From Antechinus flavipes (taxonomy: Eukaryota), in contig NC_067403.1 of the NCBI RefSeq assembly GCF_016432865.1, forward strand, positions 242,730,001-242,794,000: DNA of 64,000 bases. The letters are read 5' to 3'. Within the stretch, counting starts at the first letter, position 1; the number at the start of each line of letters is the position of its first letter. Under the pieces are notes generated by a model. The model saw only the letters and a program-made list of their open reading frames with translations, had not been told where the DNA came from and did not search any database. The position numbers were made by a program, and so were the translations under genes. This document shows positions 1 to 58,722 of this stretch, piece after piece.

Positions 1-69
1 GAACATATTTTTTTGTTGAAGCTGATAGTTTTTTATGAGGTTACAGAATCAAGAATGTTGAGGAAGGTG

Positions 70-232
70 TTTAGCTTTTTATTTTTCAAAATACATGCAA
101 AAATAGTTTTCAACATTCACTCTGCCAAAATCTTGGATTCCAATTTTTTCTCCTTTCCTCCTTCCTTCCCCCTCCTTTGTACAGCAAGTAATCCAAACTA
201 TGATAAATGTGTGCAATTCTTCTAAGCATATT
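70..232 (-). mobile_element. L1 3' UTR fragment
   Basis: Marsupial L1 3' UTR pattern: pyrimidine-rich tract followed by CAGCAAGTAATCC..ATGTGTGCAATTCTTCTAAGCATATT. Confidence 0.7.
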
Positions 233-1149
233 CAGGAAATTGTCAATTATTCAACTAGACAGTACATATATTTCATGAAGGAAAACACTGTGAATATCCA
301 GAAATAAATGAATGAAACTATAAATTTCAATAAAAGAGGCTCATAAGGGGACATAAGTGAGTTAAAAGAATAAGAGAAAATAAAGTAATGGCAGCAAAAA
401 AAAAAAAAATAAAGAATATATCTTAGAAAGGAATATACAATAGGATTGAAATGGATGGCAGAGCAGAAGGATAAGTCCTGATCAGAGTATATCACAAATG
501 AAAATTTAGAACTTAAATGCCAGTTTAATTATTACTTACATGTCAATTGATTTCGTAAATGCCAAACTAATCTTGAAAATCATTACAAAAGTTATTAAAA
601 ATAAAAAATTGAAAAGGACAAGTCTTGAAATGATAAAAAGCACTATATTGTGAGTAAGGGAAAATTAATTTGTTCTAGATCATATAATTAGAATAAATGA
701 GTATAAATTATGTCTCACAATATGAATCCATGTGGGGATTGATTGATTTCAAATGGAGAGTAAATTCACATTTGGGTTGAAACTTGAACTCCAAATTTCC
801 TTTTCATGTATACAATATTGAGGTCATAGACAATGATGAGTGAGACTTATTGGGGAACGTTTGCTCCCTTGATGATTGAATTTGGCATTTGAAGATTTCA
901 GTTTTAAACATTAATTTTTAAATTATTACTTGCTAGACCCACAATTTAAAGATGAAGGGAATAAGTATATTACATGATGATTTAAATTTTAGAAATGTAG
1001 AAATTTTATATAGCATGTTTCTCACAAAACACCAGAAAACCATGTAGTTAAATAGTAATTAATTCCTACTGATAGATGAAGAAAGTCAAGCTGTTAAGAA
1101 TACAGAGGTCTTTGGTAGTTCTTTTCAACAATGAGATGATTGAGGCCAG

Positions 1150-1512
1150 TTCTAATGAGCTTGCAATGAAGAGAGCCATCTACACTCAGAGAGAGGACTG
1201 TGGGAACAGACTGTAGATCACAACATAGCATTCTCACTCTTTTCTATTGTTGTTTGCTTGCATTTTGTTTTCTTTCTCATTTTTTCCTTTTTGATCTGAT
1301 TTTTCTTGTGCAGAATAATAATTTTATAAATATATCTATATCTATCTATCTATATATTGAATTTAACATGTTTTATATATATTGAATTACTTGCCATCTA
1401 GGAGAGGGGGTGGGAAGAAAGGGGGAGACAATTTGGAGCACAAAGTTTTTCAAAGGACAGTGTTGAAAAATTATTTATGAATGTTTTGAAAAAAAAACAT
1501 TAATAAAAAAAG
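1150..1512 (+). mobile_element. L1 3' UTR with A-rich tail
   Basis: GAGAGCCATCTACACTCAGAGAGAGGACTGTGGGAAC...GAATTACTTGCCATCTAGGAGAGGGG...AATAAAAAAA. Absent from the paralogous OR2 upstream region. Confidence 0.8.
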
Positions 1513-2785
1513 AATACAGAGTTGCTTACCCCCAGGCTTTTATTTCACTTTCCTGCATCTTAATTACAGAAAGGTCAATTAGTTCACTGATGAAAAGTAC
1601 TTTGTTCAAAGTTGTCATTAGAACAATGAAAATTGACCAATCTTTCTTTCAAATTTCTAAGAACACATGGCAAAATAGAGTTAGAGGATACTAAAGTTAT
1701 CCTTGTTCAAGAATAAGCTGAAGTTCATAAAGTGTTTAATAGGTATTGATTTTTGTGGTTTCTGTATCTTTTAGATTTCACAATTCACAATTCACAAATT
1801 TAAGATGTCAGCATGAAATAAATCATGAAGAATTTGTGATAATATCCCATTGTTCCACATTTCCTTGGGATCAGAAATGAGGGGGACAGATTTGGATAGC
1901 ATTGACTTTATGCCAACACTGTGCTAAATGCTTTTAAAAAAAACAAAACAATTAATGTTTCTTTCAATCATCTTGAAAAGTAGTTATTATCATCACGATT
2001 TATGAAAGTAAACCAAGCTTAATAGCCAGGGTCACATAAATCGAAAGTGTCTGAGGCTATATTTGTCTCAGTACTTCATGACCTGAAGTTTAGGACTATA
2101 TCTACTGTGTCATCAGTTTCCATGGACAGTCGAATATAATCTTACCCTCTATTAAATTTAAAACAGAAGAAATTATACATATTTGGTAGGAATTCTTTGC
2201 CTTCAGGGACCATGCCCATGGCATTAGTCTATTATACATTCAAAAGATGTCCTATCAGCAAGTTTTGGGAAGATGATACCTTAAATATCATAAACACTTA
2301 TACTTTATTATTTACTTCTAAGGGACAATCAGGTATTCAGAACTGTGACATAGTCAGACAATGTTTTCCAAACCTACCAGGAGAAATCTGTAAAGAAATC
2401 AGTAAAGAGATTATCCTGCATACAAAAAGAGAAAAAAGAATGACAAGTAAATGTTTTTTCAAACTTTGCTAACATATGGATTAAATGTCATTCACTCAAA
2501 TAGCACTTGGAAAAGTCCTTTCTAACCTTAACCTTTATGGTTTAAGATACATTTTCTCCAGAGGAGTCTCTTCACAAAGGGAACTGACTATTGTCTTTAA
2601 AATGCATTGGGAAGGTGTAAAATTACAAAAACTTGAGAAACTTAAAAAAAATAACAACCTAATAACAATTGGGCCTTTGTTCTGGATGATTTGCTTACAG
2701 TTGTATATTGAATGATTTTAATTACTCCTTATTTTCTTTGCAGAGAAAGCCATTTCTTGTGATTCTGTTCTTTCATTTCGCATAG

Positions 2786-3715
2786 ATGGAAAAAGGAAGG
2801 AATGTGACAGAATTCATCTTATTAGGACTTACACAGAATCTGAAGATGCAGAAAGTAATATTTGTCTTGTTTCTGATCTTATACATAGCAACACTTACAG
2901 GCAATCTTCTCATTATGGTGACAATCATCAACAGTCAAACTCTAAACTCCCCTATGTATTTCTTCCTGGCACACTTATCTTTTATAGATACAATCTTTTC
3001 ATCTTCTTCAGCACCTAAACTTATTGTGGACTCCCTAAAAGAGAAGAAAACAATCTCCTTCAATTGGTGCATGACCCAAGTCTATGCAGAACATGCCTTT
3101 GGGGCTGCTGAGATCATCTTGCTCACAGTGATGGCCTATGATCGGTACGTTGCCATCTGTAAACCACTCCACTATACTACAATCATGAGCAGGAAGTTGT
3201 GTGGTCTGCTTGTGGGGGTAGCTTGGACAGGGGGCTTTCTCCATGCAACGATCCAGATTCTTTTCACAATATGGTTACCTTTTTGTGGACCCAACATTAT
3301 AGATCACTTCATGTGTGACTTGTACCCTTTGCTCAATCTTGTCTGCAGGGATACCCATACTCTTGGTCTATTTGTGGCAGCTAATAGTGGCTTCAACTGT
3401 CTGTTAAACTTCTTCCTCTTGATGATTTCTTATGCTGTCATTCTGCGCTCCCTGAAGAACCATAGTATAGAAGGCAGACGTAAAGCCCTCTCCACCTGTG
3501 TCTCCCATATCACTGTGGTTGTCTTATTTTTTTTGCCTTGTATATTTGTGTACCTGAGGCCAGTGATGACCCTTCCTGTAGATAAAGCTGTGGCTATCTT
3601 TTATAGTATGGTGGCTCCCGTGTTAAACCCTTTAATCTACACACTAAGAAATGCAGAGGTCAAAAATGCTATGAGGAAACTCTGGACTCAGAAAATGAAT
3701 TTAGGTAATAAGTAA
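2786..3715 (+). CDS. Olfactory receptor, class II family 4 subfamily C (OR4C12-like), intact 309 aa
   Basis: ORF carries the OR motifs [30 protein letters not shown] and [10 protein letters not shown]. The N-terminus [18 protein letters not shown] and [11 protein letters not shown] resemble human OR4C12 as recalled. Confidence 0.97.
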
Positions 3716-5384
3716 ATAGATCTGTTAGATAACATCCTTATAAATAATCATATATGAGAACTGAAAGCAAAGTATTAAATAGGACTAGTCCAATGGTCAT
3801 TGTGCCAGGGCCATGAGACTGAAAAATCATTGACAGTACTTGATACAAGTCATAGACTGGTGAGATCAGCAACTAATTACCCAGAAAAAAAGTAGATTTT
3901 GATATGGAATAATTTTTATCTCTCTCCTCCTCCAAAACTCTAGGTCGATCATTTCCACAATTTAAGATGTCTTTTGTCCCCTGCTCCCTTACCCAGCAGA
4001 CTCCTTTTCAGAATCCTCAAGATATTCCAAGGTTCCGTCTGATCTAAGCAAATATTCCTCCATTTCCCCTATGTGTGGACACTCCTCCCATGATCTAATT
4101 AAAAAAAGACTCATTGTATTTTAACAAGTGGATCTGAAGGCATTTGTTATACCTTATCCTAAAAGCTTTAGTTTAGAAAAGTTTGATCCTGTAATTGATA
4201 TTTACATCTCTGGTTTATGAATTTCCATAATTTTTAATTCCTTATTTCTATGATGGTCAAGAGGGAAAGAGAATGTGATAGATTAAATAATGAAAGAAAT
4301 TCACCTTAACTTCTTTTACTATCTGTTTTTTCCCAAATATATTACATTTAAAGTTTTATGTACTATAATTTTGAAGAACTTTATTATTTACAAAGCCTGC
4401 TTGAATTTCTCATGTCATTTGTTCAACATAACAGATAATTATGTAAATCTAAAGTTGAATTACTTATCTAATTTTATTCTATACAGAGCTAAAGGGAAAG
4501 AAGGGAAGATACCCTTTCCCAGAGGCTGAAGAACATGCTTTTAGAGAGTCCAACCTCCTTATCTAATACTTGTTTATGTTTTGTTTTTAATCAGTGAAGT
4601 ACTGAGAAATGTAGTGACTTCTAAAGGTCACATATTCAATATCATGTGAGATGGAATATGAAATATCAGAGGTAAATCTGAGGTTTTCTTCACTACAGGT
4701 GCAGTACAGTCATTCACTACATGCAACGATCTCTAAATGGATTGCTTCGGTTTGGATCACTAGCAATGCTAGAAAAAGAAACAATATTCCTGACTTTTGA
4801 CACTGAAATTATTATTACTCCATCATTGCTAGGGTCTAAAATTATGAGTTTTATCACCAGAATACAGCACAGTTTAGATTTGAAAGTCAGGTAGATATAA
4901 ATGTATGCCTTGTAAATTTCAGATCAATTAGAGATTGTCTCTTTTAAGTATTTTGCAGGAAGTATGGGGATTATTAAGAGCAAGTCTCTAAAATTCATCA
5001 CTTTTGATACCACAGACTTATTACATCACCTATTTTGCAATACCTCAGAGAATATCAATTGTAAACAGTACTTGATCAGAAAAAACATCCTTCCAAAAAT
5101 CATTCAAAACTTAAGTGATCAACCTATCTTTCCTAAATCATTTCTAGGTTATCTAAGTTTAGTACTCTACTCAGGCTACTCATTACCCTTCTGAATATCA
5201 CTCTGGTGGTTAATTTTTCCTGCCATTGAACTAAAATTTGTAAGTTATATTAATTCATCCAATTTGTTCCCTTTCTATATATATAGAATGATTCAATTTT
5301 CTAAGCTACATTACTGGAAAAGTAATCCCCCTCTCCCCCTTATTGATGGTATTATTACTGTCTGACTCTTCCTGACACCATTAG

Positions 5385-13656: not shown

Positions 13657-16595
13657 TTTCCCATTATAGTTCAGAAATAGATGTTAAGTCAAAGACTTTA
13701 ATCCTTTGAAGAAATAAAGATTTCCATGAGCCCAAACTGTTTTGTTCATAGCAATATCATTTTAAAATTTCATATTTTTATCTTCATTGTTTTGTTGTCG
13801 CACTAAAAATCACTTCAGCAAGATTTTTTTAATCTAGGCCTAAAAAGAAGAAAAAAGGATAAAACAGTAGTTAAAACAAAAAAAAAAAAATGGAATGAAT
13901 ACAGCAAATGGACCTAATGATTTGAGGTACCTTGCTGACATAGGCTATAAAGCATGGAGCCTAGATTCAGAGGGAGCTGAGTTCAAATCTACCTTCAGAT
14001 GCTTATTAGTTGTATGTCACTCTTTAAATCACTTAATGTCTTCTACTTCAGAATCTTCACTTCTGTAATGTATATATAGGATATTCTTTATCTCACAGGT
14101 TTATTGTGTGGATAAAGTGACATATTATTTAGAAAATTCACTGCAAACTTCAAAAAATAACTATATTATCTATTATCACCATAGTTCTTCGAGTTGTGAA
14201 TCTATGTATATGATTGTACATATGCGTATGCTTGCTTATGAGTGTCATGACATATATGCACATTTGGATTTTCATAGGTAAGGTTAACATGAAGTATTAT
14301 ACTTTAGAACTACAATTTTAAAGTAGGAATGTAAATAATAAATTCAGACGATTTGCAGTTAAGGTGTTTTGTCTGGGGAAACATTCTATAATTAGCATAT
14401 CAATCAAAACAATAAGTCTTCCCTCCAGAGCACATGTCTGAGCTACCTTTTCCTGCCTTTAACATGAATCAGAGCATAATGGACTGAGAGCAAAAGGTGA
14501 TGTTTTACCTCATATGCTACTTACTATACTCGGGTAACAATCTGGCACTTTCATAGCTGAGAAAGTACAATGAAAGATGGTGATTTTTTTCAAAGAAAAT
14601 ATTGAGAATAGAAAACTGAAGACTATGTCTTGTGAAAATTCTGTTCTTTTCTAATCACTAAATGTTTTAAGTACCTAATTTGTGCAAGCTGATGTGTTAA
14701 ACTCTCAGATGAAAAATTTACAATGAAACAATTTTTACTCTCAAATAAACATAGTTTATTGGATGAATATACTGTATATACATGTACATATCATGCCATG
14801 AGTATTTGAAGAAGGAGAAAGAAAATTAACAAATGCTGTTATGAAGGTAGCAATCAAAACAGAGTTAGTACCTGAGTTTAAATTTAAAGAAAGGTTTCTT
14901 GAACACAAATGAGGATGGACTAGAGGATTGTTTAAGCTGTGAGTCTGTATGAATTTACAAAAGGATGTCCAGGAAATTGCTAATAGTTCAATTAGAGAAT
15001 ACCATGGACTTCATAAGACCATAAATTTTAGAAAGGGAGGTTTAGAACAGGACAAAAAAGATTTAAGTGGAAAAGAGAAAGATAAATAGAAGAGAAGAAA
15101 TAAAGAACATATAGGAGAAAGGGTTGTACAACAGTACTAAAACTAAATGGAAGACCAGACGGATGAATCTTAAATAGAGGATATCACAATAGAAAATCAA
15201 GACCTATGATTTTTTTAAATGACAAACCAGTCTTGGAAAGTAGTCCTATAGCCTATAAAATACAAAATATTGAAAAGGATGTCTTAAAATGTCTTAAGCT
15301 CTGTAATGTAAAAGAGGAGTAACTTAATTTGGCCTAAATCATGCAATTAAAATTAATGTGGGGATTCATTTGGCTCACAATGAGAACCCCTGCAGGGATT
15401 GAATGATATCAAATGGAGAAGACATTCAAATTTTGGTTGACTAATGGATTCCAAATTTCATTTCCATATGTGCAATATTGTAACTATAAGCAACTAAGAA
15501 ACAAGGAAGCTTATTGGGGATCTTTTTTTTCCCTTGATGACTGAAGCTTATTGGAGACCCTTGTTTTGTCCTTGATGATTAAAATTGGGATTTGAAGAAC
15601 TGAATTTTAATTTTTACTTGAATAAATGAATTTTAAATGTTTAAAAGTAATAATTTATTACTTGTTAAACCCTCAAGTTAGAAATGAAAAAAATTAAAAT
15701 AGGTAATTATATCACATGGAGGTAAAATTTTAGGAATGTTAAAATGTTATGTAGCACTTTCCTCACAAAATATCAGTAATCCAGGTAAATAGTAATTAAT
15801 TTTAAATAACAGATGAGGAAAATAGATCTACTAAAAAAAATAGCCATTATGAAAACAGGATTCCTCATCCCCAGGCTTTTGTTTCATTTTCTTAAATCTG
15901 AATTACATGAAGAAAAATTAGTTCATTGACGAAGAGTAGTTTCTTCAAAGGTGTCATAGGAATAATTAAAATGACCCAATTTTTCTTTCATACTTCTTCT
16001 AAGAACATATGGCAAAATAAAGAAGGATAATATTATGAGTCAAGAACAAGTTGAAGATAGAAATGAGTCCAGTGAGCAGTGTTCTTTGTGGCTTCTCTAG
16101 AATCTCCAGCTATAAGATTTTAGGTATTTGTCAACAAATTCAAAATGTCAGCTTATTAGTAATAATAAGTAAGGATATATTAATATCTTAATTTGTTGAT
16201 CATACCAAAATAAAAAAAAATAAGAATGACTGGCAATGTTTGACAAAAATTTGCTAACACATGGATTTAATGCTACTCACCCAAACAGATTGGACAAGAT
16301 CTTTATATCCTAAAATGTACTTCACCTTCACCATGAAAGACAAATTTTTTTACCAGGAATGATTCTTATGAAGCAGGGAACTGGGTTTATAATTAATTAA
16401 ATGTTAGAATAGGCCTTGGGAAGGTGTGAAGTCATAATCACTTGAAATAGTTTTTTTTTTTTTTTTTTTAATTTGAGTCTTTGTTCTACATGGTTTATTT
16501 ACACTTATCTAGTGAATTATTTTAAGTATTGTATAATTTACTTATTCTCTTTATAGATAAAGCACATCTCTTGAAATTCTTTTCTTTTTACATAG

Positions 16596-17525
16596 ATGGA
16601 AAAAGGAAGGAATGTAACAGAATTCATCTTATTAGGACTTACACAGAATCTGAAGATGCAGAAAGTAATATTTGCCTTGTTTTTGATCTTATACACGGTA
16701 ACACTTACAGGCAATGTTCTCATTATGGTGACAATCAGCAACAGTCAGACTCTAAACTCCCCTATGTATTTCTTCCTGGCACACTTATCTTTTATAGATA
16801 CAATGTTTTCATCTTCTTCAGCACCTAAACTTATTGTAGACTCCCTAAAAGAGAAGAAAACAATCTCCTTCAATTGGTGCATGACCCAAGTCTATGCAGA
16901 ACATGCCTTTGGGGCTGCTGAGATCATCTTGCTCACAGTGATGGCCTATGATCGGTATGTTGCCATCTGTAAACCACTCCACTATACTACAATCATGAGC
17001 AAGAAGTTGTGTGGTCTCCTTGTGGGGGTAGCTTGGACAGGGGGCTTTCTCCATGCAACGATCCAGATTCTTTTCACAATATGGTTGCCTTTTTGTGGAC
17101 CCAACATCATAGATCACTTCATGTGTGACTTGTACCCTTTGCTCAAACTTGTTTGCATGGACACATATACTCTTGGTCTATTTGTAGCAGCTAATAGTGG
17201 CTTTAACTGTCTGTTAAATTTTCTCTTGTTGATGATCTCCTATGTGGTTATTCTGCGTTCCCTGAGGAATCATAGTGTGGAGGGCAGACGTAAAGCCCTC
17301 TCCACCTGTGTCTCGCATATCACTGTAGTTATCTTATTGTTTTTGCCTTGCATATTTGTGTATCTGAGACCGGTGAAGACCCTTCCCATAGATAAAGCTG
17401 TGGCTGTCTTTTATAGTATGGTAGCTCCCCTGTTAAACCCTTTAATTTACACATTAAGGAACACAGAGGTAAAAAATGCTATAAGGAAGCTCTGGACTCA
17501 GAAAGTAAATTTAGATGATAAGTAA
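16596..17525 (+). CDS. Olfactory receptor OR4C12-like, intact 309 aa; close paralog of the 2786 gene
   Basis: All OR motifs are present. The 5' ~550 bp is nearly identical to 2786..3715. Confidence 0.97.
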
Positions 17526-19518: not shown

Positions 19519-19670
19519 NNNNNNNNNNNNNNNNNNNNNNNNNNNNNNNNNNNNNNNNNNNNNNNNNNNNNNNNNNNNNNNNNNNNNNNNNNNNNNNNNN
19601 NNNNNNNNNNNNNNNNNNNNNNNNNNNNNNNNNNNNNNNNNNNNNNNNNNNNNNNNNNNNNNNNNNNNNN
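19519..19670. other. Assembly gap (152 N)
   Basis: N run. Confidence 1.
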
Positions 19671-22603: not shown

Positions 22604-23530
22604 CTAGGTAACCAGAGTCTCCTTTCGACTGCATAATTTCTTGATGGCATTTTTCATTTGGTTATTTCTCAGTGTGTAGATTAAAGGGTTTAACATGGGG
22701 GTGATAATTGTGTAAAAAATTGCAACAGCTTTATCCATGGGAAAGGTTGTTGCAGGCCTCATATAGATAAAAATGCACGGGACAAAGAATAAGACAACCA
22801 CAGTGATGTGGGAACCACAGGTGGAGAGGGCTTTGCGTCTCCCCTCCACACTGTGAGTCTTGAGAGAACTCAGGATGACAGCATAGGAGACCATTAAGAG
22901 GAGGAAGTTTAAAAAACAGATGAAACCACTGTTGGCTGCAACAAAAAGGCCAAGGGTATGAGTATCAGCACAAGCAAGGTTCAGCAAAGGATTTAAATCA
23001 CACATAAAGTGATCGATGACATTGGGACCACAAAAGGGTAATTGGATCAGGAACAACATCTGTATGGTTGCGTGGAATAAACCTCCTATCCATACTACAC
23101 CCACCAAGAGATAACGCACACGCCAATTCATGATGTTCACATAATGCAGGGGCTTGCAAATTGCTACATAGCGGTCATAGGCCATTACTGTAAGGAGAAT
23201 GCCCTCTGCCCCTCCAAAGAAGTGTTCTCCAAAGACTTGGGTCATGCAACCATTGAAGTAAATGGTTTTCTTTTCATAGAGTGAGTCTATAATGAGTTTA
23301 GGTGTGTTAACAGAAGAATAGCAAGCATCTATAAAAGACAGATAGGCAAGAAAAAAGTACATGGGGGAATTCAGGGTTGGGCTGATGTTGATGGTTATGA
23401 CAATGAGTGTGTTACCTACCATTGTAATACCATAGATGATAAAAAATACAACAAAAATGATTTTCTGCATCTTTGGATTCTCTGTAAGTCCCAATAGGAT
23501 AAATTCAGTCACATTGTTTCCATTATCCAT
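22604..23530 (-). CDS. Olfactory receptor OR4C13/OR4C46-like, intact 308 aa
   Basis: [24 protein letters not shown] and [12 protein letters not shown] are present. [30 protein letters not shown] and QMKNAI resemble human OR4C13 as recalled. Confidence 0.97.
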
Positions 23531-32978: not shown

Positions 32979-33110
32979 NNNNNNNNNNNNNNNNNNNNNN
33001 NNNNNNNNNNNNNNNNNNNNNNNNNNNNNNNNNNNNNNNNNNNNNNNNNNNNNNNNNNNNNNNNNNNNNNNNNNNNNNNNNNNNNNNNNNNNNNNNNNNN
33101 NNNNNNNNNN
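32979..33110. other. Assembly gap (132 N)
   Basis: N run. Confidence 1.
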
Positions 33111-38159: not shown

Positions 38160-39089
38160 ATGGATAATGGAAGGAATGTGACTGAATTCATCTTATTAGG
38201 ACTTACACAGAATCCAAAGATGCAAAAAATAATTTTTATAGTATTTCTAGTCTTATACATGGTAACTCTGGCAGCCAACCTACTCATTGTGATCACCATT
38301 ACCACCAGTCATGCTTTAGGTTCCCCTATGTATTTCTTCCTGGCACACTTATCTTTCATAGACACAATTTATTCATCTTCTTCAGCTCCTAAACTCATAA
38401 TGGATTCCCTCCATGAGAAGAAAGTTATCTCCTTTAATGGATGCATGACCCAGGTCTACGCAGAACATATCTTTGGAGGTACTGAAATCATCCTGCTCAT
38501 GATAATGGCCTATGATAGATATGTAGCCATCTGTAAGCCTCTCCACTATATGACCATTATGAACAGGAAATTGTGTTTCATATTTGTGATTGTAGCTTGG
38601 ATAGGGGGCTTTCTCCATGCAACTATCCAGATTCTTTTCACAATCTGGCTCCCTTTCTGTGGACCTAATATTATAGATCATTTCATGTGTGACTTGTACC
38701 CTTTGCTCAATCTTGTCTGCATGGACACCCATATTCTTGGTCTATTTGTGGCAGCCAACAGTGGTTTCATCTGTCTGCTAAACTTCCTTTTCTTGATGGT
38801 ATCCTATGTTGTTATTCTCCATTCCCTGAAGAATCACAGTCTGGAAGGAAGACGTAAAGCCCTTTCCACCTGTATCTCCCACATTACTGTAGTTGTCTTA
38901 TCTTTTTTGCCTTGTATATTTGTGTACCTGAGACCTGTGGTCACTCTGCCTATAGACAAGGCAGTAGCTGTATTCTACACTATGATATCTCCATTATTAA
39001 ATCCTTTAATATATACCCTGAGGAACACAGAGATAAAAAATGCTATGAGGAAACTCTGGAATCAAAAAGTGAATTTACATAACAAATAA
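38160..39089 (+). CDS. Olfactory receptor OR4C12-like, intact 309 aa
   Basis: All OR motifs are intact. [16 protein letters not shown] and [18 protein letters not shown] match the OR4C12 type. Confidence 0.97.
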
Positions 39090-41637: not shown

Positions 41638-41905
41638 TGTGCATGTGCTAATTATATACTACCCATACTACTGCATTATAAACTTGCTATTATGTGTAGC
41701 CGCCTCGTTGCTACTTAGTATAACTCTGCTTCAATTACAACACAGGTTGTCACCTCCCCCACTTCTCAGGAAGGCCCCCAAGATGCCCCCAAGGGGGATG
41801 AGAGCCAAACCAGACTCAGCAGGTTGCCTGGCTGAACTGGAGGGTCTTATATCTCACCCAGAGCTCCCCCACTAACTGTGGCCCTCTACATCTCCCACTA
41901 TTTTT

Positions 41906-42300
41906 GTTTTATATTGAAGCAGGTATATACCAGTGGTTAAATCCATCAGCATGCGAGGAATCACACAGGCAAGTAGTAATATAACAAGCAATATGAATAA
42001 ACAAGCTACTATAAAAGACTTCCATGAATCCCAGAAGGAATATATAGAAAATATCTATTGTTATTTCTCTAATCCATTGAGCCCCCTCAGTGTACATTTG
42101 TGGTCACTTGCTGTGAATTATTGATATATATACCACAAGGGGAATATATAATCACACATATAGCTCTTTCTGAAGCCAAGAGACAGTCAAAATCAATCTA
42201 TTGTCAATTACTTCACATGTCAGGGAATCCTATGATGCCTGCAGGTTTTGAAGTCCTGCATCAATCTGATTAACAATTATTTTTATGGTCATGGTGATGT
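41906..42300 (-). pseudogene. ERV env transmembrane subunit fragment
   Basis: LQNLQAS*DSLTCEVIDNRLIL/DCLLASERAIC is ISD-like. SFWDSWKSFIVACLFILLVILLLACVIPRML is the membrane anchor. Frameshifts are needed to join these. Confidence 0.7.
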
Positions 42301-42439
42301 TCATTAGTCAATTACCATACACATAGGGCTAACAGCCATGTTCTTTCAGTGGTAGACATAGTCAGAGATGAAGCCACCTGATATTTCTTGTGTCTTCCCC
42401 TTTGTTTCAAGGGTCCTTTCTTTTTCCACCACTGTCAAA

Positions 42440-43215
42440 TTGACCAGACAGATGTGGTATGTCAGCACCTATCAGATTCCTTCTCCATCTGTAGACACAC
42501 AAGCAAACTCTCTGCCCTATGTGGTTAATCTGTCTCACCCCTTCCATTCACCACTGTCCAGATCTCTCCACATCACCTGCTGATTATCTAAAGATAGTGG
42601 AGCTGCTCGCACTGACACTGCTCTTCAGGTAGGCTATGAAACCTGTCTGCCAGAGCCAGTGAATCTTCATTAAAAAAAAAAAAAAGATAGTGTAAAGAGC
42701 TAGGTTTAGAAATTCTCTAGGGTTGCCTGTGGCTCCCCCTTTCTTTTGTTTTTGGAGGAATGTCTTGATAGCTCAGTTCCTTCTTTCTACTATTGGCTGT
42801 CCTTGAGGATATGCCAGTGGTGTGTGAAATCTGATACTGTACACAAAAGTGTACGAAATGTTTGGAAGTATATGCAGGTCCATTATCTGTTTTTATTACT
42901 TCTGGCATGCCCATAACTATAAAGACCTGTATAAAGAATTCATCTTTATTTTGCTGCTGGTATTGCAAAAGTAAATCCTGAAGCGTCCACTATAACGTGA
43001 ATAAAAGCTAGATGGCCAAAAGATTTACAATGCATCACATCCATCTTCCAAATTTCATTAAGTTTCAAACCATGAGGATTCTTCCCTGGAAGGAGCATAC
43101 GAACATAGAAAGGAGGGCAAGCTGTACAGACTTTTACTATACTCCTAGCCTCCTCTTTTGTTATCCCAAACTGCAGATGTAAAGGTCATGCAGTCTGATG
43201 ATAATTTAGAAAGAG
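42440..43215 (-). pseudogene. ERV integrase, frameshifted, with stops
   Basis: CxxC of the zinc finger, the D,D(35)E motifs WKMDV, KTDNG and VER, and a C-terminal WRDL..GREFACVS are spread over several frames. Confidence 0.88.
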
Positions 43216-43690
43216 ATTCTTGGGCTGCCTGAAATAAAGGAGTATTGGCTAACATAGTGAGATGGCTATCTGCCTTTGACTTATCATCAAAAATAGGATC
43301 TGGAAATCCACAATGAGAGTGGACATGCAAAATATAAATCTTACCTGGATGCTTTCTCACTTGCTCTTGAAGTTCCTTAAAAAGCTGATATATATTGGAA
43401 GGTACAAATTTTATTTGGGCTGTGGCAATTCTTTGTACCACATCTATTGAATAGGCCAAATCAGATATTATATCTACATCTTCTGGAAAATAAGTAAGAG
43501 CTAGTACAATTGCATACAACTCATTCTGCTGAGTGGACTGAAAGGAAGTTCTGACTACTCTTTTTATAACTAATTCAGGAGAATATATAGCACAAATGTT
43601 AAGTTTGGATGTATCTATAAGTATGGTCAGTTCTTTAAGAGATATTTTGGAAACTTTTTCTTCAAAAATCCATGGCCAGTTATGTAATAG
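43145..43690 (-). pseudogene. ERV pol RNase H segment, stop-free for ~181 codons
   Basis: Extends the provided 43145..43519 ORF upstream to a stop at 43691-43693. The acidic RNase H residues (IDTS, NEL, ISDL, KADS) are retained. Confidence 0.85.
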
Positions 43691-46600
43691 TCAGGCTAAC
43701 TTTAAGGAAGCTGCGTGTAAAATTTGGACCTGTCTTCAATAAAATTTTCCGTTCTGGGATGGTTTCACTTTTTTTTTACATTATTTGTTTGTACATGTGT
43801 ATAAAAGGTATATATCTTATCAGGTCCTATCCCAGATAATTGAACTACTTGCTTTATGGCCTTTAATAAGATTCTAGCCACAAGCACTGGATAAAGGATA
43901 AGGCTTTAGTCTGGTTATACTGTTTTTGCTATAGATTTCTAGTCATTAGGGGTTAGGATTTCATAAGCCAAATTCTCTAATAATATCTTAACATAAGGTG
44001 ATACAGACTCATAGAAGGTACAAGTCTTTTTTAGATTTTTGATGATTTCCAGATTAAAAGGAGTATATCTTCTCCTGATTTGACCTGGAGGTTCATTAGG
44101 GTCAGGTTCTTCAATCACAATGCTTCCATTCTCAGTCCAAATGTATCCAGTCTTTCCTCCCTTGCTTTAATGCCTCTTGTAATTAGGACATATGAGAAGG
44201 GCAAAACTGCTGCACATGGGTGGTGCAGATAATGTCACCACCCCTCCTGCTACTCCTTTTCCTAACCAAGAAGGTGGAGTTGAGGGAGGAGTGTCAGGAA
44301 GCAGAGGATACTTAAGGGCACATGCAAGGGCATAGGCAGAAGTGAAGGAGAGCTGAAAAATGGAGAAGTGCCATGCCCCTCAAACCTTCCAGCACAGTAT
44401 CAAACAATATAAACAAACAAGATAATATAAAAGATTTGCTTAGCTCCATCCCATGCTGTCTACTCTCTAGGCTACAGGCACCAACCCTCCGCTTGTCTTT
44501 CTCCTCATACTTCCTTGTTTGACATCACATAAATAAGACTTGCTATATCACTCTTCTACTTCCATTATTATACATTCTGAAAATTCCTTTTCTGCTCATA
44601 ATGTCTTGGTCTAGTGTTTTTTTTTCTATGCCAGAACATTTTAATCATTTTTGTGTTAATCATATGTATGTGTATACGTGTGTTTGTTCTTAATAAGTAC
44701 ATACAGGCTGAATAGTGAATCCTGTGCCCCTCTATTCTCAGAATAATATTTGAAAGACATGAAATAATATTTTATATCAGATTATGATGGAGACCAGTTA
44801 TGTAGAAATGCATTTATTAAAATGATAAAGGAATAATGTTGTAGATGTCCAAGTTAAAAATTTATCTTTTCATCTTTTAAAATCCATGTTTTCATAGTTC
44901 ACTAAATGTAGTTTTGACTTGTTTTTCTTTCTTTAGAATCTTGACCTTATAAATAAATATTTGAAGCTTTGAGGAGAAAGATGGCAAACTAAAGATCAAG
45001 ATTTCCATAAAACCACACTTATCATTTCTGACTTGGTTATGTTAGATGTGTGACAATCAAGTTACACTATGTGGATATTTGTTATTTACATAACATGTGA
45101 GCAATGCATTCCTTTAGACACTAGTAGAAGTGAAACATAGATGACCAAGGAAGCCAGATATAATGACCCATTATTATGAAATTATGCAGGCTATTTATGA
45201 AGATGTAATCAAAATAATTATTAAGACATCAGCAGCACTGCCTAATTCCCTTACAGACTACCTCATATTAGCGTTCCATCTCTGCATTATTAAAATAGGG
45301 ATATTATAAAATACTAGATTTTCATGCTTACTCACCTCCAGAGAATTGAGAGTTTGGAAATGGAATACAAGTAGAAAGGGAGATTGAAACAGAGATGTTA
45401 TGTCCTTCAATACATGTTTCTAATTCCTCTTGATTTTATCATGTTTTTGCTAATCACATTAAACAAAATTCTTAAGGCCTTTTAGGAAATGAGTAGAACA
45501 TGGGTGGGTGATGTAATTATAAAAAAAAAAATAGATATGCATCTACTTCACTTACTCTTTTATTTATGTGGATTAAAATATTAAAATTTACTGTTAAGGA
45601 AATTAACAAGTCTTTGTATTATTATGAAATAATTTTAACTGTCAAAATCTTTAGAAAAATTCTAGCAATAATTTTGACAGTTTTGAGGCAACATCTTGAA
45701 AACTGGAAAATTGATGGATGATTAAAAAATTAAATAGTAGTTATAAAACCCAACCATGATATTAAAAATTCATGTAAAATAAATCTTCCTCTCATCTAAA
45801 TGTATATATGGATTAATATATTGATTTAGATAGATATGAATATAGATTTACATTATTATTTGATATATCAGAATAATGATGAATGCATGGTTTGCTTAGG
45901 TATTATTATTAATCTTACCAAAGAGTTTTGTTCTATTAGTATAAAAGAAATGGAAAAGATGAACAAATGGTGGTTAGATGAAAACACAATTAAATGAATT
46001 TAGAACTCAATTCATTTTGAAAGGAAGCCTTTATCTCAACTGGGTTTGTGTTTCTTTGATTTCAACACTGCTTTCCTTCTCCATTCCAAAATCAGCCAGC
46101 AAGCTATCATATAGCATGCATATATATATATATATATATAGCATTCCATCTCCTTTGCAATTCTTATCTTCATCAAATAGTATTTTTGGCAAACTTAGAG
46201 TGTCATCTTTTACATGAGATGAGTAGTAATTTTTCATATACTCTCACCGTACAAGGCTCCCTCTAAAATTAGATTTTGTTTTGTTTATCTTTTTGCTTAT
46301 ACTTCTGAATGTACATATTTTTCCTCTCAAATAAAGTATAAACTTCATGAGAGCAAAAGTGAGTTTTTCCCTCTATTCACCATGTGAAGCATTCAGTCAG
46401 TCAACAAATATTTATTAAGTACAATATTCTTGACTTTGTAAACAATGCCTGAAACAGAAGAGGCACAGACAAAATACTTAGTAGATGTAACTGGTCTTTT
46501 AAATGAAAACTATTTCCATATTGACATTTCAATTTTTGAAAAAAATCTGATGCTTGCATTATTTGTATAGTATATATTAAAATATGAATGATATAATACA

Positions 46601-46906: not shown

Positions 46907-47836
46907 TTACTGGGCATCCACAATCTCCTTTTGGCTGAATAATTTCTTGATGGCATTTTTCATTTGAGCATTTCTTAGTGTGTAGATTAAAGGGTTTAAC
47001 ATGGGAGTGATCATAGTATAAAAAACGGCAACAGCTTTATCAACAGGAAAGGTTGTTGCAGGCCTCAGATAGATAAAAATGCATGGAACAAAGAATAAGA
47101 CAACTACAGTAATATGGGAGCCACAGGTGGAGAGGGCTTTGCGTCTACCCTCCAAACTGTGAGCCTTCAGAGAACTCAGGATGACAGCATAGGAGATCAT
47201 TAAGAGGAGGAAGTTTAAAAAACAGATGAAACCACTGTTGGCTACAACAAATAATCCAAGGATGTGAGTGTCAGTGCAGGCAAGGTTCAACAAAGGATTT
47301 AAGTCACACATAAAGTGATCTATGACATTGGGACCACAGAAGGGTAATTGGACCAGGAACAGCATCTGTATAGTTGCATGAAGTAAGCCTCCTATCCACA
47401 CCACACCCATCAAGAGGCTACGTAATCGCCAATTCATGATGCTCATATAGTGCAGGGGCTTGCATATTGCCACATACCAGTCATAGGCCATTACTGTGAG
47501 CAGGATGACCTCAGCCCCTCCAAAGAAATGTTCTCCAAACACTTGTATCATACAACCATTGAAGAAAATGGTTTTCTTTTCATAGAGTGAGTCTATAATT
47601 AATTTAGGTGTGTTAACAGATGAATAACAAGCATCTATAAAGGACAGATAAGCAAGAAAAAAGTACATGGGGGAATCCAAACTAGGGTTGATGACAATAG
47701 TAATGACAATGAGTATATTACCCACCATTGTTATAACATATATAATGGAAAACACAACAAAAATAATTTTCTGCATCTCTGGATTCTCCGTGAGCCCCAA
47801 TAGGATAAATTCAGTCACGTTATTTCCATTACCCAT
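46907..47836 (-). CDS. Olfactory receptor OR4C13/OR4C46-like, 309 aa, open frame but DRY changed to DWY
   Basis: Paralog of 22604..23530. The motif reads [10 protein letters not shown] (GAC TGG TAT). Confidence 0.93.
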
Positions 47837-57804: not shown

Positions 57805-58722
57805 ATGGATAGTGCAAACAATGTAACTGAATTCATTCTTTTGGGTCTCACACAGAATCCAGAGATGCAGAAAATGTTTTTTGTGGTATTTTTACTCATC
57901 TATCTGTTGACCTTGGTGGGAAATCTATTAATTGTCATTACCATTGCAGTCAGTCAGACTCTAAACTCCCCTATGTATACCTTTCTTTCTTATTTGTCCT
58001 TCTTAGATAGTTGCTATTCTTCTTCCATGGGCCCCAAAATGATAATTGATTCCCTCTCTGATAGAAAAACAATATCTTTCAATGCATGCATGGCCCAGCT
58101 CTTTGCAGAACATTTGTTTGCTGGGGCTGAGATTATCCTCCTAATGGTGATGGCCTATGACAGTTATGTGGTCATTTGTAAGCCCCTGCATTATTTAACC
58201 ATCATGTACAGATCAGTATGTAGTCTTTTGGTGGGATTGGCTTGGATGGGAGGCTTTATTCATGCCATAATATTGATTCTATTCATCATTTGGTTACCTT
58301 TCTGTGGACCCAATGTTATTGACCATTTTCTTTGTGATTTCTTTCCTTTGTTGAAACTCTCTTGTGTTGATATCCATCCCTTTGGGATTTTTGTTGCTGC
58401 CAATAGTGGGATAATGTGCATACTAATTTTTTTCATGCTTCTCGCATCTTATATCATCATTTTGAATTCCCTGAAAACACATAGCTCAGAAGGGCAGCGC
58501 AAAGCTCTTTCAACTTGTGTGTCCCACATTGCCGTGGTCATTTTGTTCTTTGTGCCATGTATGTTTGCATATCTACGGCCTATGACCACTTTTCCCATTG
58601 ATAAGGCCATGGCTGTGTTTTATACAATGATAACACCAATGTTAAATCCCCTAATCTACACATTGAGGAATGAAGAAGTAAAAAATGCCATGAGAAAATT
58701 ATGGAGCCAAAGAATGCTTTAA
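57805..58722 (+). CDS. Olfactory receptor family 4 subfamily C (more divergent member), 305 aa, open frame but [10 protein letters not shown]
   Basis: Contains [34 protein letters not shown] and [15 protein letters not shown] is changed to DSY and VAIC to VVIC. Confidence 0.92.

What the first reader, a model, noticed from the sequence alone, without database searches (positions are those of the whole stretch)
2781..3335. Gene-conversion tract makes OR1 and OR2 mosaic receptors
A manual alignment of 2786-3715 with 16596-17525 gives 16 differences in codons 1-183 (549 bp, ~97%), only 6 of them in codons 71-183. Codons 184-309 have ~50 differences (~381 bp, ~87%), many synonymous. The switch is abrupt at ...TTGCTCAA(T/A) (3335 / 17145). 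Flanks just upstream of CATAGATG and downstream of the stop are only ~70-80% identical. Purifying selection would not erase synonymous differences in just one half, so recent non-allelic gene conversion between old paralogs is the best explanation (inference). The receptors would then share TM1-TM4 and most of ECL2 but differ in TM5-TM7, giving reshuffled binding pockets.
Basis: partly seen in the sequence, partly recalled or inferred. Interest (0 to 1): 0.72.

Follow-up and report, generated by a model that had tools for sequence, protein, structure and literature searches.

The report
Partly homogenised olfactory receptor paralogs
Two neighbouring smell-receptor genes of an antechinus are almost identical in their first 550 bases but old and divergent in the rest, because copying between gene copies has kept only the front half alike; a third copy, the Tasmanian devil and a dunnart show the same pattern, so it is old, recurrent and of a kind already known for this gene family.

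Summary
OR1 (2786-3715) and OR2 (16596-17525) align without gaps, with 16 differences in nt 1-549 and 50 in nt 550-930. The best breakpoint is after nt 551 (window 3336|3337), with 0 of 5000 permutations as extreme. Synonymous divergence is 0.074 in the 5' part and 0.46 in the 3' part. Orthologue dS and the distance to a third paralogue are the same in both halves, so constraint does not explain the contrast. Flanks on both sides are old (60-78% identical, then unalignable), so this is a non-crossover conversion tract and not a hybrid gene.

The window is most likely Antechinus flavipes. An upstream third paralogue (OR0) and the syntenic orthologues in Sarcophilus and Sminthopsis carry the same mosaic with the same boundary. 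The 3' halves form three strong orthology clades. The 5' halves of all nine genes form a near-star tree at orthologue depth. The main homogenisation therefore dates to about the base of these dasyurids. Fourteen sites against one, and a 241-nt identical run in Sminthopsis, point to later short conversions confined to the 5' half.

Four independent assemblies exclude an assembly chimera. Three bases (3271, 3283, 3298) disagree with public contigs. This is a new member of a known kind. The scan's index held no similar note.

The parts
2786..3715 (+). OR1: intact 309-codon olfactory receptor gene (OR4C12-like)
   Evidence: ORF. Pfam 7tm_4 E=7e-46. Closest solved chain is consOR4 8UYQ, E=8e-130. 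dN/dS about 0.16-0.24 against OR2.
2781..3336 (+). Homogenised (conversion) tract in OR1: 5 nt before the ATG plus CDS nt 1-551, encoding TM1-TM4 and most of ECL2
   Evidence: 97% identical to OR2 with a break after nt 551. OR2-private indels and substitutions begin about 10 nt upstream of the ATG.
3337..3715 (+). Unconverted, old 3' part of OR1 (end of ECL2, TM5-TM7, helix 8)
   Evidence: 13.2% divergent from OR2, dS 0.46. It groups with the Sarcophilus and Sminthopsis OR1 orthologues.
16596..17525 (+). OR2: intact 309-codon paralogue, 13.8 kb downstream of OR1
   Evidence: ORF. Pfam 7tm_4 E=2e-46. Syntenic orthologues P0007 and P0008, each followed by an OR3-like gene on the minus strand.
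16591..17146 (+). Homogenised tract in OR2
   Evidence: Counterpart of 2781-3336.
17147..17525 (+). Unconverted 3' part of OR2
   Evidence: The OR2 orthology clade has 99/97 support in the 3'-half DNA tree.
3209..3336 (+). Possible younger Antechinus OR2-to-OR1 patch (CDS nt 424-551) next to the breakpoint; three of its bases are in doubt
   Evidence: In the assembly Ant_OR1 differs here from Ant_OR2 at 2 sites but from its own orthologues at 6. Public contigs of the same species read C/C/C at 3271, 3283 and 3298 where the window reads A/T/T.
38160..39089 (+). OR4: more distant paralogue used as outgroup
   Evidence: 17.5-19.0% from OR1 and OR2 in both halves.

Best explanation
OR1 and OR2 are two of three tandem OR4C12-like olfactory receptor paralogues (OR0 - OR1 - OR2). 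The three arose by duplications on the dasyurid stem lineage. Interlocus (non-allelic) gene conversion of the non-crossover type overwrote the first ~550 nt of the coding exon among the three copies at about, or shortly before, the split of Antechinus, Sarcophilus and Sminthopsis. The tract runs from about the ATG to the middle of extracellular loop 2. The last ~380 nt and all flanking DNA were left untouched. Since then short conversion patches have continued to pass between the copies in each lineage, again only in the 5' half. The tract starts at the ATG because non-coding DNA upstream was already too diverged to pair (inferred). The 3' edge then became self-perpetuating, or was held by selection: identical runs in the 3' half are only 25-60 nt long against 65-241 nt in the 5' half (shown), which would block heteroduplex extension (inferred). 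The result is three intact receptors under purifying selection that share TM1-TM4 but differ in TM5-TM7.
For: Shown:
- Abrupt change in divergence at nt 551.
- dS of 0.074 (5') against 0.462 (3') for Antechinus OR1-OR2, and 0.06-0.17 against 0.21-0.59 for all nine within-species paralogue pairs. Orthologue dS is the same in both halves (0.09-0.17 and 0.06-0.20).
- Distance to OR4 is uniform at 17.5-19%.
- Breakpoints of all 27 paralogue pairs, within and between species, fall at nt 410-630 (24 of 27 at nt 464-630; nt 551 for five of the nine OR1/OR2 pairs). Orthologue controls are mostly non-significant: seven of nine at 27/300 permutations or more, two OR2 pairs at 4-5/300 with breaks at nt 887 and 308, away from the boundary.
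- The 3'-half DNA tree resolves OR0 (99/96), OR2 (99/97) and OR1 (78/86) as orthology clades. The 5'-half tree is a near star.
- A likelihood-ratio test rejects branch lengths of the 5' half being proportional to those of the 3' half: 2dlnL=94.5, df 16, p=4e-13. The internal paralogue branches are collapsed and the tip branches are alike.
- Flanks: orthologous non-coding DNA is 88-95% identical. OR0-OR1 flanks are about 80%. OR1-OR2 flanks are 60-78% and then unalignable. OR2-private indels shared by all three species reach to about 10 nt before the ATG.
- Synteny OR0-OR1-OR2-OR3(-) is kept in three genera.
- Continuing exchange: within-species sharing between paralogues occurs at 14 sites against 1 cross-species site in the 5' half (sign test p=0.001), and at 4 against 5 in the 3' half. 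Sminthopsis OR0/OR1 have a 241-nt identical run (permutation p=0.003), although each differs from its orthologues there at 3-6 sites.
- The two independent Sarcophilus assemblies are identical in OR1.
Against: - No donor or direction can be named for the old event.
- Topology is the same in both halves, (OR2,(OR1,OR0)); only node depth differs. The case therefore rests on synonymous and branch-length contrasts and not on a hard topological conflict.
- The post-speciation signal rests on about 14 sites. Paralogue reads mis-placed during polishing could inflate it: the Antechinus assembly is PacBio CLR polished with Pilon and 100-nt reads (PMC9290055).
- Public contigs of the same species disagree with the window at 3271, 3283 and 3298, and none of the contigs shown bridges 3336.
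- The 3'-half dS (0.4-0.6) looks old for a duplication that the protein trees place inside the dasyurid stem. It is estimated from only about 87 synonymous sites.
Confidence: 0.85

Rival explanations
1. There was one ancient conversion only. All later within-species sharing between paralogues in the 5' half is homoplasy or an assembly-polishing artefact, and there is no continuing exchange.
For: OR2 keeps about 7 diagnostic 5' sites in all three species. The Antechinus patch at nt 486/498 is contradicted by public contigs. The Antechinus assembly was Pilon-polished with short reads.
Against: Homoplasy should give species and cross patterns equally, but the 5' half gives 14 against 1 while the 3' half gives 4 against 5. 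The signal also comes from Sarcophilus, where two independent assemblies are identical, and from Sminthopsis, with a 241-nt identical run at p=0.003.
Confidence: 0.2
2. The 5' identity is an assembly collapse or a chimera of paralogue reads.
For: Paralogues 97% alike are hard to assemble from noisy long reads. Short public contigs break inside the CDS and three bases disagree.
Against: The same mosaic and boundary occur in four independent assemblies of three genera. OR1-private and OR2-private sites inside the tract are conserved in the orthologues. Single-copy contigs of two other runs match the OR1 flanks and nt 50-141 without a difference.
Confidence: 0.02
3. There was no conversion. The 5' half simply evolves more slowly because of stronger constraint, a lower mutation rate or an embedded regulatory element.
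For: TM3 with its MAYDRY motif and ECL2 are conserved across the family. dN is lower in the 5' half (0.018 against 0.072).
Against: Synonymous divergence between orthologues is equal in the two halves. OR4 is 17.5-18.4% away in the 5' half and 18.3-19.0% in the 3' half. The OR3/OR5 pair is uniform at 13.3% and 12.0%. A single rate scaling is rejected at p=4e-13.
Confidence: 0.03
4. Unequal crossing-over inside the coding region made hybrid genes, each joining the 5' half and upstream DNA of one copy to the 3' half and downstream DNA of another.
For: Tandem OR arrays do undergo unequal crossover. The switch is a single sharp one inside the gene.
Against: The high identity stops within about 10 nt upstream of the ATG for OR2. 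The OR2 upstream region has its own indels shared by three species, and it is 60-78% identical to that of OR1. A crossover product would carry the donor's upstream flank.
Confidence: 0.03
5. The three genes are young duplicates, with the 5' half giving their true age. The 3' halves look old because they were overwritten from other, more distant OR genes or evolved fast under positive selection.
For: The 5' and 3' trees share the topology. The 3' halves carry most amino-acid differences (18 of 25).
Against: Non-coding flanks agree with the 3' half and not the 5' half: OR0-OR1 flanks are about 20% diverged against a 3' dS of 0.21-0.26, and OR1-OR2 flanks are 22-40% diverged or unalignable against a 3' dS of 0.41-0.59. 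The 3' halves of all nine genes form one clade (95/93) apart from every other marsupial OR4C12-like protein found. The 3' dN/dS is about 0.16, so selection there is purifying.
Confidence: 0.04

Closest known systems
Mosaic olfactory receptors made by gene conversion in mammalian OR clusters (Sharon et al. 1999, primate chromosome-17 cluster, as summarised in PMC1995454)
   Same: Tandem class II OR paralogues exchange parts of their single coding exon by conversion and produce mosaic receptor sequences. The review states this as a general principle of OR evolution.
   Different: Here there are three genes in a marsupial family (Dasyuridae). One boundary in ECL2 is shared by three genera, and there is evidence that exchange stayed confined to the 5' half after speciation. 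I did not read Sharon et al. itself, so I cannot compare tract positions.
Interlocus gene conversion in human segmental duplications (PMC3790853, PMC4467073)
   Same: Short unidirectional transfers between paralogous loci, detected as local drops in paralogue divergence and as sharing of variants between paralogues.
   Different: Those studies concern young duplications that are more than 90% identical over long stretches. Here only the coding exon still pairs, and the flanks are 60-80% identical or unalignable. I saw only titles and abstracts.
OR4C12 / consOR4 (PDB 8UYQ)
   Same: OR1 aligns over residues 1-304 at E=8e-130. Sources name the dasyurid orthologues 'olfactory receptor 4C12-like'.
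   Different: The dasyurid OR0/OR1/OR2 trio is a lineage-specific expansion. It forms a clade of its own in both halves. No ligand is known.

Membership tests
Class II olfactory receptor, family 4 (OR4C12-like) | Match to the olfactory-receptor 7TM profile over its full length | tested here: met
   Pfam PF13853 7tm_4, profile positions 1-280 of 280, E=7e-46 (OR1) and 2e-46 (OR2).
Class II olfactory receptor, family 4 (OR4C12-like) | Single uninterrupted coding exon of about 930 nt with the conserved motifs ([21 protein letters not shown], PxLNPxIY) | tested here: met
   ORFs of 309 codons. The motifs are visible in the translations. A splice-acceptor-like TTTGCAG / TTTATAG lies about 45 nt upstream.
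Class II olfactory receptor, family 4 (OR4C12-like) | Closest relatives are OR4C12 genes | tested here: met
   Best named hits are 'olfactory receptor 4C12(-like)' in marsupials and eutherians at 79-97% identity. consOR4 is the best solved chain.
Class II olfactory receptor, family 4 (OR4C12-like) | Expression in olfactory neurons and response to odorants | not testable with these tools
   No RNA run was examined and no assay was possible.
Interlocus (non-allelic) gene conversion tract | Abrupt regional drop of paralogue divergence that includes synonymous sites | tested here: met
   Max chi-square 36.5 at nt 551, 0/5000 permutations. dS 0.074 against 0.462; Fisher p=4e-7.
Interlocus (non-allelic) gene conversion tract | Not explained by regional rate or constraint: orthologues and outgroup paralogues evolve alike in both regions | tested here: met
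   Orthologue dS 0.09-0.17 (5') against 0.06-0.20 (3'). OR4 distances are uniform. Proportional branch lengths are rejected at p=4e-13.
Interlocus (non-allelic) gene conversion tract | Old sequence on both sides of the tract (non-crossover), which separates it from an unequal-crossover hybrid | tested here: met
   The upstream flank is 60-78% identical with OR2-private indels. The 3' half and downstream flank are old.
Interlocus (non-allelic) gene conversion tract | Different genealogies inside and outside the tract | tested here: inconclusive
   Three strong orthology clades outside the tract and a near-star tree inside it. The underlying topology is the same, so the conflict lies in node depth, plus 14 species-pattern sites.
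Interlocus (non-allelic) gene conversion tract | Donor and direction identified | tested here: inconclusive
   The old event has no surviving unconverted 5' half. For the young Antechinus patch (nt 424-551) OR2 looks like the donor, but the bases are in doubt.
Interlocus (non-allelic) gene conversion tract | Junction confirmed by reads that span it in the same animal | tested here: inconclusive
   Only Logan contigs were available. They fragment in the CDS and one ends exactly at 3336. None of the contigs shown bridges it. Support comes from four independent assemblies instead.

The most novel reading that the evidence does not exclude
The conversion boundary in extracellular loop 2 is held by selection and not merely by sequence divergence. 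Recurrent conversion would then keep one common TM1-TM4 'chassis' (possibly also a coding-region element needed for expression or trafficking) across three receptors for tens of millions of years. Converted TM5-TM7 alleles would be purged so that three ligand specificities persist. That would be modular concerted evolution inside a single-exon GPCR.
Probability: 0.15. Interest if true: 0.55.

Novelty: new member of a known kind. Interest (0 to 1): 0.35.

Why it matters
Partial conversion makes these paralogues look young in one half and old in the other. Whole-gene identity (92% at the protein level) misdates the duplication. Orthology calls or birth-and-death counts for marsupial OR repertoires that are built on whole-gene trees will be distorted. 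The trio is also a natural domain swap: three intact receptors with nearly the same TM1-TM4 and different TM5-TM7, conserved in three genera. Ligand screens of the three genes and of laboratory chimeras could show how much odorant specificity sits in TM5-TM7. For genome quality, the three disputed bases show where short-read polishing of paralogues may have acted.

Tried and rejected
- **Structure model.** An AlphaFold2 model of OR1 built from a 34-sequence alignment came out poor (mean pLDDT 44). I used only its helix pattern to place residue 183/184 between TM4 (136-163) and TM5 (190-222), and ran no fold search.
- **Reads.** Laying public runs on 2300-4200 returned only Logan contigs. These fragment inside the CDS, so the junction at 3336 could not be bridged and copy number could not be read from depth.
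- **Run of identity in Antechinus OR1/OR2.** The 119-nt identical run (nt 244-362) is not significant on its own (permutation p=0.30). I do not claim it as a separate young tract.
- **OR4.** The dip in OR4 divergence at nt 421-570 lies in the family-wide conserved ECL2 region. I did not take it as conversion.
- **Absolute dating.** I found only the age of the Antechinus species split in the genome paper (6.8 Ma) and none for the deeper dasyurid nodes, so I give relative depths only.
- **Scan index.** Searches of the scan's earlier findings by place and by words gave nothing related.

Full report
**What is there.** The window holds six intact olfactory receptor ORFs of 305-309 codons. All six look like OR genes by translation and tblastn. 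OR1 (2786-3715), OR2 (16596-17525) and OR4 (38160-39089) hit Pfam 7tm_4 over the whole profile. The closest solved chain is consOR4, PDB 8UYQ, at E=8e-130. OR1 and OR2 are on record only as window-encoded proteins, on a 264,590,327-nt contig. That is the length of Antechinus flavipes chromosome CM028222.1, which carries the next relatives.

**The observation.** OR1 and OR2 align without gaps. Upstream, identity falls from 97-98% to 76-78% with gaps in the last 100 nt before the ATG, and to about 60% beyond. Downstream of the stop it is 74-76% for 100 nt and then below 55%. Weak collinear homology further upstream (317-1766 against 15018-16099, 63-72%) shows an old segmental duplication.

**Why this is not constraint.**
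- Nei-Gojobori dS for OR1-OR2 is 0.074 in the 5' part and 0.462 in the 3' part. dN is 0.018 and 0.072. The synonymous contrast gives Fisher p=4e-7.
- The distance to the outgroup paralogue OR4 is 17.5-18.4% in the 5' part and 18.3-19.0% in the 3' part. The OR3/OR5 pair is uniform at 13.3% and 12.0%.
- Between orthologues (see below) dS is 0.09-0.17 in the 5' part and 0.06-0.20 in the 3' part. The two halves therefore mutate and drift at the same pace.

**Relatives change the picture.** A word search found dasyurid proteins named 'olfactory receptor 4C12-like'. I fetched their DNA.
- In Sarcophilus and in Sminthopsis the same gene order holds: OR0, about 25 kb, OR1, about 14 kb, OR2, then an OR3-like gene on the minus strand.
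- Antechinus has an OR0 (P0004) on the same chromosome, outside the window. Its locus is about 82% identical to window 2-4169 over 4.2 kb.
- In nt 550-927 the nine genes fall into three orthology groups. Orthologues are 2.4-6.9% apart, OR0-OR1 7.8-10.1%, and OR2 against the others 11.4-14.1%.
- In nt 1-549 all nine lie within 2.4-5.8% of each other, so paralogues are no further apart than orthologues.
- The 3'-half maximum-likelihood tree gives OR0 99/96, OR2 99/97 and OR1 78/86, with Sminthopsis outside Antechinus plus Sarcophilus in OR0 and OR1. The 5'-half tree is a near star in which only OR2 is weakly monophyletic at 77/84.
- On one fixed orthology topology, the branch lengths of the 5' half are not a scaled copy of those of the 3' half (2dlnL=94.5, df 16, p=4e-13). 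The stems of OR2, OR0 and OR1 shrink from 0.060, 0.027 and 0.017 to 0.015, 0.002 and 0.002, while tip branches stay alike.
- Max chi-square breaks for all 27 paralogue pairs, within and between species, fall at nt 410-630, 24 of them at nt 464-630. Five of the nine OR1/OR2 pairs break at nt 551. Seven of the nine orthologue controls are far from significant; the Ant-Sar and Ant-Smi OR2 pairs reach 4/300 and 5/300, with breaks at nt 887 and 308, away from the boundary.

The mosaic is therefore an inherited feature of a three-gene family in at least three genera, not a recent Antechinus event.

**Conversion, not a crossover hybrid or a foreign 3' half.**
- Orthologous non-coding flanks are 92-95% identical (Antechinus-Sarcophilus) and 88-92% (Antechinus-Sminthopsis). 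OR0-OR1 flanks are about 80%. OR1-OR2 flanks are 60-78% for about 400 nt and then unalignable.
- These depths agree with the 3'-half dS (0.21-0.26 for OR0-OR1 and 0.41-0.59 for OR1-OR2). They do not agree with the 5' half.
- Upstream of OR2, a 9-nt insertion and other private changes shared by all three species reach to about 10 nt before the ATG. The tract therefore has old DNA on both sides, which marks a non-crossover conversion.
- For OR0-OR1 the high identity (91-94%) extends about 100 nt further upstream.
- In half-gene protein trees with 25 other sequences (22 other marsupial OR4C12-like proteins, three eutherian outgroups), the nine genes form one clade in both halves (100/99 and 95/93). 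No outside donor for the 3' halves is visible, and the duplications lie on the dasyurid stem.

**Age and recurrence.** Inside the 5' half OR2 keeps about seven diagnostic sites in all three species (nt 88, 102, 243 and 407, and partly 111, 121 and 210). OR1 and OR0 differ at about two (nt 80, 214). The main homogenisation thus slightly predates the split of the three genera.

There is also a later signal. In species-by-paralogue quartets, sites where the two paralogues of one species share a state against the other species outnumber the mirror 'cross' pattern by 14 sites to 1 in the 5' half (sign test p=0.001). The count is 4 to 5 in the 3' half. Homoplasy should give both patterns equally.

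Examples:
- nt 423 is C in all three Sarcophilus copies and G in all three Sminthopsis copies.
- nt 411 and 490 are shared by Sminthopsis OR0 and OR1.
- nt 294 and 412 are shared by Sarcophilus OR0 and OR2.
- nt 358 is shared by Antechinus OR1 and OR2.

Sminthopsis OR0 and OR1 are identical over 241 nt (nt 215-455; permutation p=0.003), although each differs from its orthologues there at 3-6 sites. The two independent Sarcophilus assemblies agree base for base in OR1. I read this as continuing short-tract conversion confined to the 5' half, with about 0.65 confidence.

**Why the boundary holds (inferred).** Identical runs between paralogues reach 65-241 nt in the 5' half but only 25-60 nt in the 3' half. 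From general knowledge of homologous recombination, which I did not test here, exchange needs a stretch of near-perfect identity. A half that escaped the first event would therefore stay excluded. Selection for distinct TM5-TM7 could add to this. The data cannot separate the two.

**Reads.** Four public runs were laid on 2300-4200. Two of them (X17, X18) match the flanks without a single difference over more than 1 kb, so they are the same species. They also match OR1-private sites in nt 50-141. Contigs break up inside the CDS, as expected for a de Bruijn graph of paralogues. One 117-nt contig ends exactly at 3336. None of the contigs shown bridges the junction, so this test is inconclusive. 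That contig reads C, C, C at 3271, 3283 and 3298 (nt 486, 498, 513), where the window reads A, T, T, while it keeps the OR1-private A at nt 492. These are the sites that made nt 424-551 look like a young Antechinus OR2-to-OR1 patch. The window's states are either a polymorphic converted allele or a polishing slip. The assembly was PacBio CLR, wtdbg2 and Pilon with 100-nt reads (PMC9290055). The main conclusion does not depend on these bases.

**Function.**
- Both genes are intact, with dN/dS of about 0.16-0.24.
- Of 25 amino-acid differences, 7 lie before residue 184 and 18 after it. Eight are fixed between the OR1 and OR2 groups in all species: V27A, R136K, H191Y, F210L, A217V, F248L, M261K and V279L.
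- The helix pattern of a low-confidence model puts TM4 at 136-163 and TM5 at 190-222.
- Whether ligand range follows the 3' half is untested.

**Comparison with what is known.** A review states that gene conversion generates mosaic receptor sequences in OR clusters, citing Sharon et al. 1999 (PMC1995454). Conversion is also acknowledged as a confounder of OR orthology (PMC1794568). A text search for olfactory receptor, marsupial and gene conversion found no paper on this in dasyurids. I therefore file this as a new member of a known kind. The feature of modest added interest is a boundary shared by three genes and three genera, with exchange that stayed on one side of it.

Noticed in passing
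window 3271, 3283, 3298: Public contigs of the same species (runs X17, X18) and of related species read C, C, C where the window reads A, T, T, within 28 nt of an otherwise identical region. This is either a polymorphic conversion patch or a short-read polishing slip in the assembly.
   Followed up: partly
window 46907-47836 (-) and 57805-58722 (+): OR5 has MAYDWY and OR6 has MAYDSY where the family has MAYDRY. The arginine of the DRY motif at the end of TM3 is replaced in two otherwise intact ORFs.
   Followed up: no
window 22604-23530 (-) and 46907-47836 (-): The OR3/OR5 paralogue pair is evenly diverged along the gene (13.3% in the 5' part, 12.0% in the 3' part), with no mosaic. It served as an internal control.
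   Followed up: partly
L008:20718-20897 and L008:2-190: In Sminthopsis a further 309-codon OR gene starts 10.7 kb downstream of OR0, between OR0 and OR1. Its first 179 nt are 86% identical to OR1. The 3' end of another OR gene lies 10 kb upstream of OR0. Whether Antechinus has the in-between gene was not checked, because that region lies outside the window and L001.
   Followed up: no
L008:10001-10897; L004 and L007:10001-10927: Sminthopsis OR0 ends 11 codons early (298 aa). Sarcophilus and Sminthopsis OR2 lack one codon near the C-terminus (308 aa), whereas Antechinus OR2 has 309.
   Followed up: no
L001:7240-11372 against window 2-4169: The OR0 and OR1 loci of Antechinus share about 4.2 kb of collinear homology at 82%. 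OR0-OR1 is therefore a younger segmental duplication than OR1-OR2.
   Followed up: partly
window 19519-19670 and 32979-33110: Two runs of N (152 and 132 nt). They were left as they are.
   Followed up: no
window 41638-44525: Another first-stage note on this window reports an ERV remnant here. I did not examine it.
   Followed up: no
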